Below are positions 40 through 39,612 of a stretch of 64,000 nucleotides of DNA, piece after piece. Made by a program: the position numbers and the translations under genes. The stretch is taken from contig NC_047081.1 of the NCBI RefSeq assembly GCF_902459465.1, positions 3,348,001-3,412,000 of the forward strand, written 5' to 3'. Every line of letters begins with the position of its first letter. The stretch's first letter is position 1. The DNA comes from Asterias rubens (lineage: Eukaryota). Below the pieces are notes generated by a model. That model searched no databases. It worked only from the letters and a program-made list of their open reading frames with translations, and had not been told where the DNA came from.

Positions 40-224
40 GCACACAAATTCGTCCAACAAGGGTCATTTTTGTTTCATATTTTCTCGCAACTTTGATGAC
101 CAATTGAGCCCAAATTTTCACATGCTTGTTATTTTATGATTATGATTATTTTATGATTATAATGGGATACACCAAGTGAGGACACTGGTCTTTGACAATT
201 ACTAAACGTGTACCTTCCCTTTAA
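40..224. mobile_element. Right half of a related TTAA MITE (terminus GTGTACCTTCCCTTTAA); a sister copy starts at 49591
   Basis: Family body plus TTAA end. 49591 begins TTAAAGGGAGGGTGTAC. Confidence 0.6.
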
Positions 225-360
225 TTGCCTGATGTTTGGACCCAAGCAGAGTCTTTCTCAAAGTCTTCGCCGATTTAGCCTTTCTCAAAGTCTTCGTCAA
301 TTAAGCCTTTGAGAAAGACTCTGCTAGGGTCGAACCAAATGCCAGGCCATTCAATATTTT
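221..360. repeat. Degenerate inverted pair of the hammerhead repeat with an internal short duplication
   Basis: Both arms keep AGACTCTGC and the stem-I ends, but GAAACGTC is destroyed in both (CAAACATC on minus; GAACCAAATGCC on plus). Confidence 0.6.
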
Positions 361-2483: not shown

Positions 2484-2855
2484 TAAAAATTTTGGTTTTT
2501 ACCCATACACCAATGTGTGTTAGCACTGTATACTCACGAGTCCTGTGAAAAAAATATCACAGGCATGTTACTCTGGTGGGATTCAAACCCACGACCCTTG
2601 CAATTCTAGAGCAGTGTCTTACCAACTAGACTATCGAGGTTGCCCAGTAGCTAGAGGCAGTTCGAATCCTATGTTTTGGCAGCGGGTACCGCAACGATAT
2701 AAGAGATGTTAAATTTGCATAGGGGATAAAGAATATAAATTTTGTTTTTTACCCATACACCAATGTGTGTTAGCACTGTATACTCAGTATATCGGTGTAT
2801 GGGTAAAAACCAAAATTTATATTCTTTATCCCCGATGCAAATTTAACATCTCTTA
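2484..2855 (-). mobile_element. tRNA-headed SINE-like retroelement with 250-bp direct repeat, inverted tail and 12-bp TSD
   Basis: The minus strand has an A-box-like TCTAGTTGGTAAGA and a T-arm GTGGGTTTGAATCCCAC. ACCCATACACCAATGTGTG recurs at 2501 and 2751. 69-bp inverted arms at 2696-2764 and 2791-2859. TATCTTAAATTA flanks both ends (2472-2483, 2856-2867). Confidence 0.75.
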
Positions 2856-3164
2856 TATCTTAAATTACTTGTGTAAATGGTTCATACAGACAAAATGTTT
2901 ATCACACAAAAAACACCAAACACATTGCTTGCACGTTACACAACAAACTTTTAAAATGAAAAAAGAGCAACTCAAAAAAGAATTGAACTTTACTTCACCT
3001 TAGGTCTGATACAAGAAAATACATCAGGTTTTAAATTCTTCATTTAACTAGTCAATTATAATTCATCCAATTCGTTTTTGATTAAATTGTTGGACTACAA
3101 CTCTAGTATACAACCATGAATCGAGAGTCACTGTCCGATACAATCCATTACATACAGGTCTATT

Positions 3165-3208
3165 AGCCTTTGAGAAAGACTCTGCTATAGGGTCGAAACG
3201 TCAGGCCA
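3165..3208 (+). ncRNA. Minimal type-I hammerhead ribozyme motif (U3-A8 core variant)
   Basis: GCCU - UUGAGAA - A - GACUCU(GCUAU)AGGGUC - GAAAC GUC - AGGC. Shows stem I, a covariant core, an extra A, a 6-bp stem II, GAAA, a 2-bp ACGU stem III and a GUC site (cleavage predicted after 3202). Confidence 0.65.
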
Positions 3209-3302
3209 GTAACTATTTTCTTGAGCAATCAATTACCTGACATGTTTTGAGATTATTGCAATTGATCACCAACACAGGTAGTGACTTTCTACATACTCTG
3301 TT

Positions 3303-13406: not shown

Positions 13407-15561
13407 TACCGCTAGATTCTTCTTCAAAACTGCTTAAAGGAAATACATACGGCACTTATTCATGTCAACAACACACACTTCTAGCGCGAGTGTGCTGGTG
13501 TTTTGCTGGGTACATCCTTTCGTTCATGTGTGGTTCTGAACTCTGAACTAAACAATGCTGCATGTACTTTGTGTTGAGCCCAAATTGCCGCATCACTCAA
13601 TGTTGTTCCGCCTTGATCTGTCAGAAAACAAAACAACCCTAGGCAGGAAAACACAAAACTTGTTTGTTTCATTTGATTGTACCCTTTGGTTTGTCACATT
13701 TATTTTTATAATTATTTCCTCCTATGTATATGAAACATTTATAGTAATAATAAACTACTAATTTACATGATATGTAAAGGTCAAACAAAATACTTTCCTC
13801 AGTTCTTCCTTAGGCCTATTTTGTTCTTTAAAAAATCAATCGATTATCTTAAACGCCATCGATTTCTTTGATGAATACTTCAAGGAACTCATCGATGACT
13901 AAATAGTACTGTACAAATCATTCTATTTTTGTTGTTTTCTTTCCGTGAAAATTGCATGCAAAACAATTTGTGGTAAAAATGTTGATTTAGTTCGCGGTTG
14001 AATATTACTTTCACCTGTAGTAAACCGGTCAAAATGTACGAAGCTCGGAATGTACGCTCGTATCGTCTGCAACTTTTCTCAGCGTAAAGTTGATTGTAGC
14101 AAAACATTTTAAGTATAAGATTCTTAATAGAATATTTTTCAGCAATGTGCATTGTCTTCACAGAGTTTTTTTTTTAATTATTTTATGTTATATATGTTTA
14201 TGGGTTTTTCTGGGGATTTTGTCTTCTTCTAAATCGTAATACACAAAAGCGTAAAACTGAATAAGGAAGTTCCATTCTTCAATCTCGTAACTAATGCTGC
14301 ACCAAATTATTTGAATAATACGTTGAAAGCTATAAGCCACAAGAAGTTAGTTTGATGAGTGCAGGCCGCACCTTGCCCCCATGGTGGAATTTCTAAGAAT
14401 TGACTCACCCGCTTGGGTTGGCACTCAGGTAGGCCGGAGAGAAACCGACACTGCCCGGTACCCTGCGGGGTCCAACAACCACAGAGCATGGGTACAAAGG
14501 GTGACTTTCGTTCTCTAGTCGGTGAGGCCCAATTTCGAAGAGCTGCTCGGGCCAAAATGTACCGACAAGAACAATGTCAAGTAACATAAAACATCTGTGA
14601 CAGGAATTGAGCCATATTTTTTTGGATAACAAGCTCTTTGAAAATGTCCTAAATCACGTTGAAAAGGATCTCTTCATAAAAAAAAAGTTATTTTCCAACA
14701 AAAATAATAAACGCAAAAAATAGTTAATGGCCTGACGTTTCGATCCAAGCAGAGTCTTTCTCGAAGGCTAATGACCATTTAGCCTTCGAGAAAGACTCTG
14801 CTAGGGTCGAAACGTCAGGCCATTAACTATTTTTTTGCATTTATACCCTCGGTCCATTTGGTTGGTTAGTTGTTTGCAACAGCTAATTCTATTTTCACCA
14901 AAATAATAAACGTTTGTTTTAGTTCACCAATCCATCAATATACGGCAGAACAAAGTCGAAAGAAGTGCTGCATGATTAGTCACTCAACTCCAGCTGAAAA
15001 GAGGATGGTGGAATTTTCTTTCCTTTGCTGCTCGAACCAAGCAAAACATAATCAGTAGGGGATAGATTTTGTGTTCCACTTGGAACTCAAACATCAAACA
15101 TTTTCAATTATTTACAAAAGGAAGTGGAATAAACGGGAACGTTAGCCATTTCCACTTTACGTAGATTAAATCTCAACAAAATGTACATGTCAATTAAAAA
15201 CAATAATTTTTGATAATCAGGACTTTGTTTTAAAAGTCACAAAAGATGTGATCATTGAACTGCTGAGAGCTTGACAAGGTCTATCACTACCACTTTTTTT
15301 GTAGCACGCCTTCAGTCAGTCTTATATTATCCAACAAGCGCCTGTTACGAAAACGGTTAACGCCCTCTCGTGTTAGCCTTGCGCAGCCGGGGTTCTGCTG
15401 TCGGTATGCAAATTAGCAAAAATGGTAAATGTTTACGCTGCAGTCTGAGATAGAGTAGTGGATACCTGGGTGACCTGTGCAAGAAATCCATTGGAATCGT
15501 ATATTTTGGAATAGCATCGAAACCCCAAAAGGCAGCTGGTGGGATAAGTAGCCTTTCAGCT
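13407..15561. promoter_or_regulatory. Divergent promoter/5'-UTR interval shared by BICC1 (-) and calcineurin A (+)
   Basis: Lies between two outward-facing first coding exons. Contains a CTCF-like motif (15361-15373, minus) and an ATGCAAAT octamer (15406-15413). TSS positions cannot be determined from sequence. Confidence 0.6.
14713..14838. ncRNA. Inverted pair of minimal hammerhead motifs forming a ~60-bp-arm palindrome
   Basis: Plus motif at 14782-14820 (GCCU UCGAGAA A GACUCU GCU AGGGUC GAAAC GUC AGGC). The mirror motif on the minus strand has a damaged stem II. The arms differ by 2 substitutions and 1 indel around a 7-nt spacer. Confidence 0.62.
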
Positions 15562-28264: not shown

Positions 28265-30329
28265 GAAGGCACAAAGAATAACATTAAATATTTAGGAAGA
28301 CATCATAGATTTCTGTTGGTGTCACTCATTTACAAAGGTTAGGCCTCGAAATAACACACAGCCATTGCGCGGTGCCCTCTGCTTTTGCTCTGTTGCCCAT
28401 TGCATTATTGCAATACAAGTTCCTCATAGAAGTACCCTTACCGAAGGAAAATTGCTGGCCCCTTAAAGAAGACGACCTGGAAGCTTAGCCCCCTCCCCAA
28501 TGTATCTTGTGGCGACAACAAGGAAGTAAATCTGAAAAACTTAGCTATTTGGAATGAACGTGCGATTTTCCCAAAACCTTGCTCGTCTCCCAAGCCAAAG
28601 CGGCAAGTGTTCGACAGTTTGTAATTAAAAACCTGGCGCACCTGTTACTATGAGTTCATCAAAATGTGGTTGATGAATTACTGTCCCACAGCTGGGGACC
28701 AGTCACGGGTAAAGAATTGTGGCGCAGGTCAGCGATAGAATGTGAACACCAGGGAAAACATTGATATCTGACATGGCGTATATATATATATCTGATTTTT
28801 GAGTGGAGCCTTTTACGTATTTATGATTTTTTTTTGTTATTTATAAGCAGTTGGATATTTTAAGAGTGAACTGGAGTATCTGCAAAAAAAATATTTGTGT
28901 TAACACCAAGGGAATCAATTCAACACCCTCAGTTTGTACAGTGTAGGGTCATGCTAAGGTTTAAGACATAAATTCAGAGTTTGTCCTGCTCATCATATCG
29001 GGTTGGCTACAATCTAGGTGTCGGTGGTGATTATCCAAGACAATATGACGTGTTTGAAGTCAGGATGGGATAATTCCATGAGTCTTTTTTGTTTCTGCAG
29101 ATGAAACCAAGAGTGAAATTGTATGCAATCCCTCGTCTGTGAATAAAAAGCACTTAGCCATGTTACCGAGTGACACATTTCATTATTGTCTGACCTAGTA
29201 ATTTCAATGCTTTAAGCCCAGAGCCCGTAGGCCGAGGGCAGTATTTGATCAAGTACTAGGGCCCTCAGTTTATCATGAAGAGCCACTGGAGGTGTAATTT
29301 GTCAATATTATGAAATCTTACTATGCAGACAGTGTATCGGGGACCCATCTGCAAAGGGTTTTGATAGTGTAGCATCTTCATCGTGTATTAAACAGTCAAC
29401 AGTTGGCTTTCCTGGTTGTTTGTTCGACAGCATTTACTCTACCTCTCAGATGCAAATTTTGTTATGCTTTAAGATTCGTCTTCCATTAAAGTCTTGTCAA
29501 TACAGTAGGTTTCCGCCTCCGTAATTGCAGCCATCATTTCATATCCTGTCTATGCAACATCCATATCGCAAACCATTGTTTGCCAGCGGCCACGTCGACG
29601 CTATGATTGTCATCTCTCTTATATTGTTTATAGTCAGTGGTCTATCTGCGGACGAGATGTCATTCAGAGCGAGCGAGTTGCTGCTGACGCCGTGGTGGCC
29701 TGGTCGTTACAGCCCAGACTAGTTGACTCATGACCTTGAGTTTAATTTTGCATTTTCTAGGGCTGTGATGGCGAAGACTTTGAATCGATAAAGTCAGAAG
29801 TGACCTGCAGTTATCGTGGCAGTTGAGCTGCCCCTTATTTTTTCTTCTTCCTTGAGGTGCACGAGTCTTGTAGATGCGGAGACTTGACTTGGCAGTGGTT
29901 TGGATGTTGTTCAATAGCAGACATAACTATGTTGGAGTCATTTAATAACTTGGCTTGCGGAATAAAACAACTTGTTTTCTCATGGAATAAAATCAAACCC
30001 ATTTTTAAAGTCGGTTTCTTGAGAACAGCAATTGTTACAGTTTCTCACAAATACAGGTTAAGTATGAATAGAAATTGCTTTTTGATGGAAAATGTTGATT
30101 CTTTTTTCTCTCCCTGAATTGTTTGCTGAGGGTTTACATTGATACTCAACTTCTCAAGAGAATTCAGGTTATTTATTGTTTTTCTGGATTTTTTTTTCTT
30201 CTTCTCACAATATACAAAATTAGCTTTCTCATGTCGCCACCATATCGTCATGTTCCCTTTAACACCAGCAATTGCGGAATATATTATTCTCATTGTACAA
30301 AATAAGGGCATTTATAGATGAAAATACAA

Positions 30330-30386
30330 AAAATAGTTAATGGCCTGACGTTTCGACCTTAGCAGAGTCTTTCTCGAAGGCTAAAT
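30330..30386 (-). ncRNA. Minimal hammerhead motif, single copy of the same repeat
   Basis: Reverse complement reads TTAGCCTTCGAGAAAGACTCTGCTAAGGTCGAAACGTCAGGCCATTAACTATTTTT. One mismatch in stem II. Confidence 0.55.
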
Positions 30387-32237
30387 GACAACACAACAAA
30401 CATGAACAGGTAACTGAAAATACAGTTACACCCACAAATATTTTGTTTGTTGTTTTAATGTGTTCAGTTTCCATAACATAACGCTATATATCTTTGAGTC
30501 TATTTCATGCTGCAATCTATTAAATTTTACAAGCAATAATTGCCAATAATGTTGAGCGTACACTGTACAAGGTACTTCTCTAAAAAGCTTTTGCCTGAAA
30601 CCAGTAGCTACATGTACTGTGCTCATATGGTCATATTGGCTCAAGAAAAAAACTGTTGATTTGGAGGGGGAAAAAACCGCCACAGAAATGTAGATTTTGA
30701 TTGAAGAAATTGCTGGGAAACAATTTTTTCTTTTTGTGAGTGCCCTCCCACTAGAGCTGCATAGTGTGAAGATGAGATCTGAATGGAGGAATTGAGTAGA
30801 AAATAGAATCAGTGAGCATGTAGTGTAGACCCGTAATGGCTGAATCAATTCAACATCATTATTATTGGTGGTTGAGGGACAGTTGGGGTTGAACATGTAC
30901 AAGATGCTGGCCAGGTTTTATGGAAAGCACTTTGTCAGTCTTTATTAGCTTATTTTTTTTATGAGGAAAATGAGAATTTGTGGTTGACATTTATGTCAAG
31001 CAGTGTCTATGAAATCATTTGAATTTGATTTCTTTATTTACGGCTTGAATTTTTGTGGAAAAAAGTACAATAAAAACGTAGGGCTTTGAGCTAAAAATAT
31101 TTACTGGACCATAATTTGTTGTACACGACAAGATTTTGTATGAACAAAATTATCCAACTATGGGGATGGAGGAATTATCCTCGAATTTGAGAAAGAAATC
31201 TAGCAAAATAAAAATAAAAAAACCTGTTACCATGATTAACAATGCTTTGATGTCATGCCCTTCAAAAATGAAGCATTAGGTTATTAAAAAAATACCTTGA
31301 ATACAATGTTATTAAAAACACTTGATGATATGACTTAATTGGAAGAACAAATTATGCTTGGAGTAGACTGAGGCAATTTACATTCGTCAGTACCGTAGTT
31401 TAATCAAGACAACATCAACAGTTCTAATTGCTAGATTTCCGTTTTGATAAATAACCGCGATCCCTTTCACTTAACTAATTAAAAATACCAATCCATGGTG
31501 TGCTCTCAACGCTGACATATTTTTCTTCACCCCGTCAAGTGTTGAATCTTTTCCTATGCCCAACCCAACCCTGTTCACAAATTGCAAGTATATTTTCCCA
31601 GTCTCAGATATTAGAGACTTGAAAAATTCAGTACCCTTTGGATTAGTGTATCTGCCAATCAATAGGCAAATTTTGCTCAGTTCAGAAAATGCAAAAGTCA
31701 TTCAATATAGTTTATTTGTTAAAAAACCTCAATGAACAGGCCTTGGCTTACACACATGCAAGACTCAACACTTGAAATCATTCTTTCTGTTTTCCCTTTC
31801 CCCTCTTCTGAGGATTTAGACTTTACCCCTTTCACTTGCTGACATGTTCCCTGGGCTATGAGCAAATTGAGACGTACATGATGAGAATCGTGGCATCTAA
31901 AAATAGAACGGTTGAATTTCTTTAAAATGCACACTCTGTGTGGACACTGCGTTTTCATATTGTCACTCATGCGTTTTTTCTCTTCTCTTCACAATCTTGA
32001 AAGTCTGTCAGCGTGAAGACAAAATGTTATTGTAGAAATTTTATATTGCTGATGGAATTCAGTATTAGTTGAATCTCGAGGAGATAAAATAACATTATTA
32101 AATGTGGTTAATTTGAAGTTACCGCAAATTCAGAGATTTTATATAACAAACTTTTGTTTGACATGTACATGTAAGACTAAAATGTACATTTTTGGTAAAA
32201 AACATTGGAGAGCTGTTGATATTATAAAACATTGTTA

Positions 32238-38884: not shown

Positions 38885-39612
38885 GAACTTAAAAATGTAA
38901 AATTTCATTGTTGTTTTCAGCAAGTTGCGAATCTGTATATGTTGAGAAAATCAGACTTTGAACGTGAACTATTTATTTAAACTGCTGTTTTGGAGATGGG
39001 TTGTCTTTTTTTTCTTTTAAATTTTACCACCAAAATATAGTTGACTTCTTCAGTTATACAGAACTATGTTTTCAATCCTGCAACTCAATGGTTTTGGCCA
39101 ATATGTGAAAGTTTTAAACAAAATGAACTTAAAATGTAAAATTTCGTTATTGTTTTCACCAAGTTGCGAATCTGCATGTTTTGAAAAAATCAGATTTTGA
39201 ACTGGAACTATTCTTTTAAACTGCTGTTTTTTCGAGATCGGTTGTCTTTTTTTTCTTTTAAACCTTACACACAAAATATATAGATTGTCCGGTAGCTAGA
39301 GGCAGTTTGAATCCTATGTGGTCTAGTTGGTATGACATTGCTCTAGAATTGCAAGGGTCTTGGGTTCGAATCCCACCCGAGTAAAATGCCTGTGATTTTT
39401 TCACAGGACTCGGGGAAAGTACTGAGTATACAGTGCTACACACATCGGTGTATATGGGTAAAAACCAAAAAATTAATATTCTTTATCCCGATGCAAATTT
39501 AACATCTATATTTAAACACAAAATATAGTTGACTTCTTCAGTTAAACAGAACTATGTTTTCAATCCTGCAACTCAATGGTTTTGGCCAATATGTGAAAGT
39601 TTTAAACAAAAT
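38885..39612. repeat. 240-bp tandem duplication; the second unit is interrupted by the SINE-like insertion
   Basis: Units start GAACTTAAAA(A)TGTAAAATTTC at 38885 and 39125. The second unit resumes at 39516. Confidence 0.8.
39281..39515 (+). mobile_element. Second copy of the tRNA-headed element, 5'-inverted, with 12-bp TSD
   Basis: GGTCTAGTTGGTA ... GGGTTCGAATCCCAC head and the same tail as the 2484-2855 copy. TSD ACACAAAATATA at 39269-39280 and 39516-39527. Confidence 0.78.

What the first reader, a model, noticed from the sequence alone, without database searches (positions are those of the whole stretch)
3165..3208. Dispersed ~60-bp repeat that is a minimal hammerhead ribozyme with a covariant U3-A8 core
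Seen: four loci (221-360, 3165-3208, 14713-14838, 30330-30386; six motif copies) share the consensus TTAGCCT-TYGAGAA-A-GACTCT-GCT-AGGGTC-GAAAC-GTC-AGGCCATTAACTATTTTT. This maps onto a type-I hammerhead: stem I GCCU/AGGC, core UYGAGAA in place of CUGANGA, an extra A before stem II, a 6-bp stem II with loop variants GCU/GCUAU, G12-A13-A14, and a loopless ACGU stem III followed by the GUC site. Established: loopless ACGU-stem-III hammerheads are typical of Penelope-like retroelement pLTRs and cleave as dimers. C3-G8 is a tertiary Watson-Crick pair that tolerates compensatory swaps, and an extra A after A9 occurs in natural hammerheads. Inference: both C3->U and G8->A are fixed in this family, as expected if catalysis was selected. 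CUGANGA-based searches would miss it. Homology stops almost at the ribozyme boundary and there is no RT or GIY-YIG ORF in the window. This suggests a very small ribozyme-only non-autonomous retro-unit (retrozyme-like) mobilised by a Penelope-like partner.
Basis: partly seen in the sequence, partly recalled or inferred. Interest (0 to 1): 0.85.

Follow-up and report, generated by a model that had tools for sequence, protein, structure and literature searches.

The report
Penelope retroelement tails carrying variant hammerhead
The ~60-bp repeat is the tail end of truncated copies of a 3.8-kb Penelope-like retrotransposon in a sea-star genome. Its ribozyme-like motif is the minimal hammerhead already known from such elements, here with an unusual but not unprecedented core.

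Summary
Six copies of the motif sit at four loci in the window, where 0.06 would be expected by chance.

The motif is a genuine relative of the minimal, loop-III-less type-I hammerhead of Penelope-like elements (PLEs). Eight related echinoderm and marine PLE families carry the same architecture at the same place. The 3-8 core pair switches between C-G, U-A and A-U, and helices I and II show compensatory changes. The hammerhead is also the only conserved island in otherwise unalignable 3' UTRs.

It is not a ribozyme-only retro-unit. Walking upstream in the genome (417 Mb, Asterias-like sea star) leads to a ~3.8-kb autonomous PLE. It has a 914-aa RT plus C-terminal GIY-YIG ORF, pLTR partial tandems, an optional 62-nt tail, variable 5' truncation, 5' inversions and 9-15-bp target-site duplications. 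The window copies are extreme 5' truncations, and one is 5'-inverted.

All the highlighted features (U3-A8, extra A after A9, palindromic ACGU, dimer logic, opposite-strand pairs) were published in 2011-2014. The family's own twist is C at position 4. The T seen in older copies is CpG decay.

RNA-seq shows no read ends at the predicted cut site, so cleavage by this variant is untested. This is a new member of a known kind, of modest interest.

The parts
3163..3219 (+). Older solo copy (93% identical to the family master), truncated right at the 5' edge of the hammerhead. The min-HHR spans 3166-3206, with core UUGAGAA (T at position 4 from CpG decay), a 2-nt insertion in loop II and a predicted cut between 3202 and 3203. 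It ends in the short form. No clear TSD.
14701..14713 (.). Left target-site duplication (13 bp, AAAATAATAAACG) of the 14714-14899 insertion.
14715..14771 (-). Inverted 5'-truncated arm of the same insertion. The hammerhead copy on the minus strand has a mutated helix II (GGATC).
14776..14836 (+). Forward arm, 100% identical to the family master. The min-HHR spans 14782-14820, with core UCGAGAA and a predicted cut after C14816.
14837..14899 (+). Optional PLE 'tail', which is the first ~60 nt of the next unit. It marks the second, downstream start site of reverse transcription.
14900..14912 (.). Right copy of the 13-bp target-site duplication.
30328..30414 (-). Solo 5'-truncated copy (98-99% identical), made of 37 nt of 3' UTR, the hammerhead (30343-30381) and the short-form end. 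It is flanked by the 9-bp TSD TGAAAATAC at 30319-30327 and 30415-30423.
221..360 (.). Old, degenerate inverted pair (84-87% identical): a minus-strand arm at 221-266, partial duplications, and a plus-strand arm at 300-360. The GAAACGUC box is destroyed in both arms.

Best explanation
The repeat is the 3' terminus of insertions made by an autonomous, recently active Penelope-like retroelement (PLE) of a sea-star genome (Asterias-like).

The unit is ~3.8 kb. From the hammerhead cut site it runs through 20-21 nt to the first RT start site, a 62-nt optional tail, a ~740-nt leader, a 914-aa ORF (RT plus CX5CXXC linker plus C-terminal GIY-YIG) and a ~300-nt 3' UTR, and it ends in the hammerhead.

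Insertion is by target-primed reverse transcription. It starts internally, about 21 or about 83 nt downstream of the hammerhead site. This gives copies that always contain the hammerhead, are 5'-truncated at any point, are sometimes preceded by an inverted 5'-truncated copy, and are flanked by 9-15-bp duplications.

The motif itself is the PLE minimal type-I hammerhead: a 4-bp helix I, the core U3-C4-G5-A6-G7-A8-A9, an unpaired A, a 6-bp helix II with a GCU loop, G12-A13-A14, and A15.1-C-G-U16.1 without a loop, followed by C17. Because it lacks helix III it can become active only when two copies pair through the palindromic ACGU, or with help from the element's protein. Its presumed job is processing multi-unit pLTR read-through transcripts.

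Shown here: the element architecture, the homology and covariation of the motif, and the origin of the window copies. Inferred: that this particular U3/C4/A8 core still cleaves. I put that at about 55%.
For: 5' truncation series and TSDs:
- Oriented alignment of 30 genomic copies shows homology continuing upstream to different break points, with 9-15-bp TSDs.

Autonomous element:
- At least 5 copies have a 931-aa open frame.

Tandem structure and tail:
- Partial tandems (pLTRs) occur in L070 and L074, and the 62-nt 'long form' is the start of the next unit.
- 12 of 30 copies carry the tail.

Inverted pairs:
- They are always in (-,+) order: 8 pairs in the first 100 of 588 genomic motif copies.

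Comparative support for the hammerhead:
- A second Asterias PLE family (54% aa identity) and relatives at 63-71% aa identity all carry a homologous min-HHR at the same place. These are Apostichopus, Diadema, Lytechinus and three marine-metagenome elements.
- Their cores are CUGANGA, UUGAUAA, AUGAUUA and CCGAAGA.
- On the 11-row alignment, 143 of 143 cells pair and 8 of 13 pairs show double changes. The 3-8 pair reads CG:6, UA:4, AU:1. Slid controls pair at 19-49%.
- G5, A6, A9, G10.1, C11.1, G12-A15.1 and U16.1 are invariant.
- The hammerhead is the only significant similarity between the 359-nt 3' UTR and those of the relatives (E 9e-12 and 7e-14, exactly over positions 292-358).
- The helix I plus helix II fold is the MFE of the isolated RNA and persists in a 177-nt context.

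Literature:
- The same architecture, U3-A8 core, opposite-strand pairs and solo truncated copies are described in PMC4209133.
- The tail, the two internal RT start sites and protein-assisted cleavage are described in PMC11167929.
- pLTRs, inverted copies and the tail are described in PMC8557442.
Against: - Position 4 is C, not the conserved U. U4C is reported to lower activity considerably in vitro (PMC3088659), so this core may be weak or dead.
- No pile of read starts or ends at the predicted cut site in four raw RNA-seq runs.
- Every inserted copy spans the cut site, so the templates were uncleaved there.
- Rfam hammerhead models give no hit. They also miss the canonical-core family-2 control, so this is uninformative.
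- The compared sites were picked with a descriptor that demands pairing. That inflates the 100% figure, although 9 of 9 protein-retrieved elements had one such site.
Confidence: 0.88

Rival explanations
1. The hammerhead-like motif of this family is a catalytically dead or nearly dead relic, or a purely structural RNA element (for example, part of what the RT recognises near its start site). It is carried along because cleavage is dispensable for PLE retrotransposition.
For: - U4C in the master. U4C lowers activity in vitro (PMC3088659).
- PLE min-HHRs cleave poorly in vitro (PMC4209133).
- HHR mutants do not affect insertion in vitro (PMC11167929).
- Naiad PLEs thrive without hammerheads (PMC8557442).
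- No read ends at the cut site.
- All genomic copies span the cut site.
Against: - The changes that distinguish this family are compensatory: C3-G8 to U3-A8, and U-A to C-G at 10.3-11.3.
- The catalytic purines G5, A6, A9 and G12-A14 are invariant across families. That is hard to explain by structure alone.
- C4 recurs independently with a C3-G8 core in a Lytechinus element, which suggests position 4 tolerates Y in this clade.
Confidence: 0.3
2. One reading: the repeat is a very small, ribozyme-only, non-autonomous retrozyme-like unit mobilised in trans by a Penelope-like partner.
For: - The window copies hold little beyond the hammerhead.
- One locus elsewhere (L090) holds more than two tandem units of a 284-nt ORF-less derivative inside one TSD-flanked insertion.
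- A 2026 preprint derives animal retrozymes from PLE pLTRs (10.64898/2026.07.22.740005).
Against: - Copies form a continuous 5'-truncation series up to the full 3.8-kb element, with no preferred short unit.
- They are dispersed single or inverted copies, not tandem arrays.
- The deletion junction of the 284-nt derivative occurs only at that one locus.
Confidence: 0.05
3. The repeat is the terminal inverted repeat of a MITE or DNA transposon, as suggested by the perfect ~60-bp-arm palindrome at 14715-14836.
For: Inverted pairs with outward-pointing identical ends.
Against: - Most copies are solo.
- TSD length varies from 9 to 15 bp.
- Inverted arms have unequal, variable lengths and one side often carries the 62-nt tail.
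- The sequence is contiguous with an RT+GIY-YIG ORF.
- Pairs are always in (-,+) order, as expected for 5' inversion.
Confidence: 0.01

Closest known systems
Minimal hammerheads (min-HHRs) of metazoan Penelope-like elements (Cervera & De la Pena 2014, PMC4209133), including the U3-A8 variant of the Schistosoma Cercyon PLE
   Same: Location in the pLTR. Type-I topology. Short helix I (4 bp) and long helix II (6 bp). An unpaired nucleotide between A9 and 10.1. G10.1-C11.1. Palindromic 15.2-16.2 with no loop III, giving the dimer logic. The U3-A8 covariation. Genome-wide solo copies from truncated PLEs. Pairs on opposite strands 100-700 bp apart.
   Different: The host is a sea star. The master carries C rather than U at core position 4 in addition to U3-A8. 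I could not check whether that combination appears in the paper's figures or supplements.
Canonical EN+ PLEs with a CX2-5CxxC linker (Neptune/Nematis type; Arkhipova 2006 as cited in PMC8557442), and the Poseidon element PAc of Anolis (PMC11167929)
   Same: A single ORF with RT and C-terminal GIY-YIG. A CX5CXXC motif in the linker. pLTR partial tandems, adjacent inverted 5'-truncated copies, two alternative 3' ends that differ by an optional tail, and AT-rich targets.
   Different: The tail is 62 nt rather than the 30-40 nt usually quoted. The hammerhead lies ~740 nt upstream of the start codon rather than overlapping it as in PAc. Clade assignment by phylogeny was not done.
Natural hammerhead core variants (Perreault et al. 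2011, PMC3088659)
   Same: U3-A8 covariation seen in nature. U4C is known as a viable viroid variant.
   Different: Those are separate variants in other hammerhead contexts that have tertiary contacts. Here both occur together in a minimal motif without loop-loop contacts.
Metazoan non-LTR retrozymes (PMC7229834; 10.64898/2026.07.22.740005)
   Same: Type-I hammerheads derived from PLE pLTRs. The single L090 locus resembles a short ORF-less multimer.
   Different: The window copies are not tandem, have no defined short unit, and are simple truncations of the autonomous element.

Membership tests
Penelope-like element (canonical EN+) | Single ORF with reverse transcriptase and C-terminal GIY-YIG endonuclease | tested here: met
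   L063:6792-9536, 914 aa, RVT_1 at 416-579 and GIY-YIG at 817-900. Homologues carry PF00078 and PF01541.
Penelope-like element (canonical EN+) | pLTR: a full unit preceded by a partial tandem copy | tested here: met
   L070 (84-nt upstream partial copy) and L074 (384 nt) run straight into the tail and leader.
Penelope-like element (canonical EN+) | Adjacent inverted 5'-truncated copy; heavy 5' truncation; variable TSD | tested here: met
   Window 14714-14899 with a 13-bp TSD. L016, L018, L027 and L069. Eight (-,+) pairs and no (+,-) pairs in 100 rows.
Penelope-like element (canonical EN+) | Optional 'tail' extension reflecting two RT start sites | tested here: met
   Short end at ...AACTATTTTTT, or plus 62 nt. 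12 of 30 copies are long. RNA-seq loose ends occur at both sites.
Penelope-like element (Neptune/Nematis type) | CX2-5CxxC motif in the RT-EN linker; placement by phylogeny | tested here: inconclusive
   The motif C-SNISK-C-IV-C is present in the translation. No phylogeny with reference PLEs was possible.
Hammerhead ribozyme, PLE min-HHR type | Helices I and II flanking the core, with G10.1-C11.1 and an unpaired nucleotide after A9 | tested here: met
   Descriptor fit. It is the MFE fold. 100% pairing with compensatory changes across 11 sequences.
Hammerhead ribozyme, PLE min-HHR type | Core G5 A6 N7 A9 ... G12 A13 A14, A15.1-U16.1, H17 | tested here: met
   All are present and invariant in alignment A1. 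H17 is C.
Hammerhead ribozyme, PLE min-HHR type | C3-G8 tertiary Watson-Crick pair | tested here: met
   Replaced by U3-A8. Across relatives the pair reads CG:6, UA:4, AU:1 and is never unpaired. U3-A8 is known in nature (PMC3088659, PMC4209133).
Hammerhead ribozyme, PLE min-HHR type | U4 of the uridine turn | tested here: not met
   The master has C4. T in 16-18% of copies matches CpG decay at the two control CpGs. C4 is also seen in Lytechinus L089.
Hammerhead ribozyme, PLE min-HHR type | No loop III; self-complementary 15.1-16.1 tetranucleotide allowing a dimer | tested here: met
   ACGU here; ACGU or AGCU in all 11 sequences.
Hammerhead ribozyme (Rfam models) | Score against the Rfam hammerhead covariance models | tested here: inconclusive
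   No hit at the gathering threshold or at E<=10. The canonical-core family-2 motif also gives none.
Hammerhead ribozyme | Site-specific self-cleavage after position 17 | not testable with these tools
   RNA-seq shows no accumulation of read ends at the site. However, the reads come mostly from solo copies inside host transcripts, and the libraries are not end-specific.
Metazoan non-LTR retrozyme | Tandem arrays of short ORF-less units, each with a hammerhead | tested here: not met
   Window copies are solo or inverted. The only tandem short unit found (284 nt, L090) is unique to one locus.
MITE / TIR DNA transposon | Terminal inverted repeats with a fixed-length TSD and no 5'-truncation series | tested here: not met

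The most novel reading that the evidence does not exclude
The U3-C4-A8 (plus A9a) triple-variant core is a working, selected ribozyme of an active sea-star PLE, which would show that position 4 of the minimal hammerhead tolerates pyrimidine exchange. In addition, the single TSD-flanked insertion at G000:C3:194.6-195.4 kb carries more than two head-to-tail 284-nt ORF-less units with one identical deletion junction. On this reading it records rolling-circle reverse transcription of a hammerhead-processed circular RNA, that is, a retrozyme caught at birth from its PLE parent.
Probability: 0.15. Interest if true: 0.6.

Novelty: new member of a known kind. Interest (0 to 1): 0.3.

Why it matters
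This mainly matters for annotation. About 600-1,000 short hairpin-prone or ribozyme-like repeats in this sea-star genome are explained as tails of one young PLE family. Some sit in promoters and transcripts, and they should not be read as miRNA hairpins, MITEs or a new mobile ribozyme class.

The echinoderm PLE set assembled here is also a compact natural mutagenesis series for the minimal hammerhead. The 3-8 pair appears as C-G, U-A and A-U, and position 4 as U or C. That series could guide cleavage assays on how much core variation the dimeric or protein-assisted form tolerates.

Tried and rejected
- Rfam scans (gathering threshold on the whole window; E<=10 on 14690-14860 and 3130-3250) gave no hammerhead, only generic miRNA-hairpin matches caused by the inverted pair. 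A control with the canonical-core family-2 motif also failed, so Rfam cannot judge min-HHRs.
- The MITE reading was considered first because of the perfect palindrome. It was rejected on the TSD and truncation evidence.
- My first upstream walk used wrong-strand coordinates and hit unique flank. I repeated it correctly.
- RNA-seq (4 raw-read runs laid on L070) shows high depth over the hammerhead and tail (about 500-800 per mate orientation, both orientations). Depth over the leader and ORF is about 0-14, 95-98% of reads run on into unlike sequence, and no start or end pile-up appears at the cut site. This gives no support for in vivo cleavage and no evidence against it.
- I tested for a T4 subfamily and rejected it in favour of CpG decay.
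- The search for the 284-nt derivative's junction found it only at its own locus.
A census of 5' ends relative to the cut site, and retrieval of more divergent PLE families, could not be done.
- One relative (P0013) had no retrievable DNA.

Full report
**Observation.** A 25-nt pattern with up to 3 mismatches finds six copies where 0.06 are expected. A stricter descriptor of my own fits three of them fully: 3166-3206(+), 14782-14820(+) and 30343-30381(-). That descriptor requires helix I, a 7-nt core with a Watson-Crick 3-8 pair, an optional bulge, helix II, GAAA, a palindromic dinucleotide and U-H. It finds none in 30 shuffles. The other three copies carry disabling mutations. The window encodes no RT or GIY-YIG similarity.

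**What the repeat belongs to.**
- The window is C21:3348001-3412000 of a 417.6-Mb, 150-contig genome.
- A protein 99% identical to the element's ORF is labelled Asterias amurensis, so the host is an Asterias-type sea star.
- The 63-mer around the motif has more than 1,000 first-look candidates, many 100% identical. A CpG-degenerate 35-mer has 588 exact matches and 0 for the reversed control.
- When 30 copies are oriented and aligned, homology does not stop at the motif. It continues upstream into a common sequence and breaks off at a different point in each copy. The insertions are flanked by 9-15-bp direct duplications. In the window these are the 13-bp TSD at 14701-14713 / 14900-14912 and the 9-bp TSD at 30319-30327 / 30415-30423.
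- Walking upstream reaches an element of ~3.8 kb. [quoted passage not shown] At least five genomic copies keep a 931-aa open frame.
- The unit is circularly continuous in partial tandems (L070, L074). The order is ORF stop, ~300-nt 3' UTR, hammerhead, 20-21 nt, a 62-nt stretch, a ~740-nt leader, then the ORF.
- Copies end either right after ...AACTATTTTTT or 62 nt further on. 12 of 30 are long. This is the optional 'tail' of PLEs, which Frangieh et al. traced to two internal start sites of reverse transcription (PMC11167929).
- Inverted pairs such as 14715-14836 are single insertions with an inverted 5'-truncated copy. Among the first 100 genomic rows there are eight (-,+) pairs and no (+,-) pair.
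- All of this matches the published description of PLE insertions (PMC8557442). The linker carries a CX5CXXC motif, said there to mark Neptune/Nematis-type PLEs. I did not build a phylogeny.
- The MITE reading and the 'ribozyme-only unit' reading are therefore rejected for the window copies.

**Is the motif a hammerhead?** The sequence reads GCCU / UCGAGAA / A / GACUCU-GCU-AGGGUC / GAAA / CG / U / C | AGGC.
- I retrieved elements by protein similarity alone. These were a second Asterias family (54% aa identity, many intact copies), elements from Apostichopus, Diadema and Lytechinus, three from marine metagenomes (63-71% aa), and an A. amurensis copy.
- Every one carries a motif of identical layout between units, either ~260-310 nt after the stop codon or in the upstream pLTR.
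- Their cores are CUGAUGA, CUGAAGA, CUGACGA, UUGAUAA (U3-A8), AUGAUUA (A3-U8) and CCGAAGA (C4 with C3-G8). The A. amurensis copy has the same UCGAGAA as the window.
- On the 11-row alignment, all 143 pair cells are standard pairs. Eight of 13 pairs show changes on both sides. The 3-8 pair reads CG:6, UA:4, AU:1. The 15.2-16.2 dinucleotide is CG or GC. Sliding the partners drops pairing to 19-49%.
- G5, A6, A9, G10.1, C11.1, G12-A15.1 and U16.1 are invariant.
- Caveat: I located the sites with a descriptor that requires pairing. However, each of the nine elements had such a site and none was lost.
- Independently of any descriptor, BLAST of the 359-nt 3' UTR against the UTRs of the 71% relative and of the Apostichopus element finds one significant match each. 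It lies exactly over the hammerhead: query 294-358 at E 9e-12, and 292-342 at E 7e-14, with the hammerhead at 302-341.
- The helix I plus helix II fold is the minimum-energy structure of the isolated RNA and survives in a 177-nt context.
- I conclude that the motif is a true homologue of the PLE minimal hammerhead and that its fold and catalytic purines have been under selection in this lineage.

**What is and is not new.**
- Cervera & De la Pena (PMC4209133) already describe these min-HHRs in PLE pLTRs. They report the short helix I, the long helix II, an unpaired nucleotide between A9 and 10.1, G10.1-C11.1 and the palindromic 15.2-16.2. They also report the missing loop III, the dimer hypothesis, low activity in vitro, solo copies from truncated PLEs and pairs on opposite strands.
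- They explicitly describe a U3-A8 core variant with ~1,300 hits in Schistosoma.
- Perreault et al. (PMC3088659) reported natural U3-A8 covariation in 2011. They also note that a U4C viroid variant cleaves much less well in vitro yet is viable.
- The feature specific to this family is C at position 4 together with U3-A8.
C4-G5 is a CpG. In the first 100 of 588 copies it reads CG 74, TG 16, CA 8, TA 2. The two other CpGs of the motif read 75/13/12 and 83/4/13. Inserted copies therefore decay neutrally, as expected.

**Does it cleave?** Unknown.
- Four raw RNA-seq runs of 'organism B' were laid on a pLTR-containing locus.
- Depth over the hammerhead and tail is about 500-800 per mate orientation, and is equal in both orientations. 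Over the leader and ORF it is about 0-14.
- 95-98% of reads run on into unlike sequence. Loose ends with heterogeneous flanks occur at both RT start sites.
- The reads therefore come mainly from the many truncated copies embedded in host transcripts. No accumulation of read starts or ends is reported at the predicted cut.
- This agrees with the Anolis result (PMC11167929) and neither supports nor excludes cleavage.
- One firm inference follows from the sequence. Every inserted copy contains both sides of the cut site, so the RNAs that were reverse-transcribed were uncleaved at their 3'-proximal hammerhead. This fits a motif that is inactive as a monomer.
- I rate catalytic competence of the U3/C4/A8 core at about 55%. 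The rival that it is a relic or purely structural element gets about 30%.

**Side result.** At G000:C3:194.6-195.4 kb, a single TSD-flanked insertion contains an inverted part followed by more than two head-to-tail copies of a 284-nt ORF-less derivative. Its order is hammerhead, tail, the first ~198 nt of the unit, then the last ~86 nt of the 3' UTR, then hammerhead again. The deletion junction occurs three times there and nowhere else in the genome. It could reflect a multimeric or circular template, but it is a one-off.

**Verdict.** The hammerhead reading is supported by comparative evidence. The 'new covariant core' and the 'ribozyme-only retro-unit' claims are not supported. This is a new member, with a C4 twist, of a kind published in 2014. 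Interest is modest.

Noticed in passing
L090 (G000:C3:194500-195700), positions ~168-913: One TSD-flanked insertion holds an inverted part plus more than two tandem units of a 284-nt ORF-less deletion derivative of the PLE. Hammerheads sit 284 nt apart. The deletion junction is found only at this locus. It may be a trace of a multimeric or circular RNA template.
   Followed up: partly
L079:593-629 and L080:584-620 (G000:C4:12.49 Mb and C11:6.98 Mb): A second PLE family in the same genome (54% aa identity, many intact 921-aa frames) carries a canonical-core min-HHR (CUGAAGA, GC at 15.2-16.2). It ends 23 nt after the cut site.
   Followed up: partly
L087:708-744 (marine metagenome contig), L089:2336-2372 (Lytechinus variegatus): Related PLEs carry an A3-U8 core (AUGAUUA) and a C3-C4...G8 core (CCGAAGA). 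Together with U3-A8 these form a natural series of core variants in one PLE clade.
   Followed up: partly
L049:274-322 (-): A third type of min-HHR in the Asterias genome: helix I UCUC/GAGA, core CUGACGA, a U as the unpaired base and a 6-nt loop II. Its parent element was not examined.
   Followed up: no
window 2569-2640 (-) and 39312-39384 (+): Two similar tRNA-like sequences score just above the Rfam tRNA threshold (35.8 and 37.7 bits). They have several mismatches in the acceptor stem. They are probably tRNA-derived SINE heads or pseudogenes.
   Followed up: no
L070 raw position 2332 (inside the 62-nt tail): In all four RNA-seq runs, hundreds of reads break at this point into one and the same flanking sequence (agreement 0.95-1.0). 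This implies that one particular truncated copy sits in an abundantly expressed host transcript.
   Followed up: no
genome-wide motif copies: All three CpGs of the motif show 17-26% TpG/CpA decay among copies that are otherwise exact. This indicates germline methylation of these insertions in the sea-star genome.
   Followed up: partly
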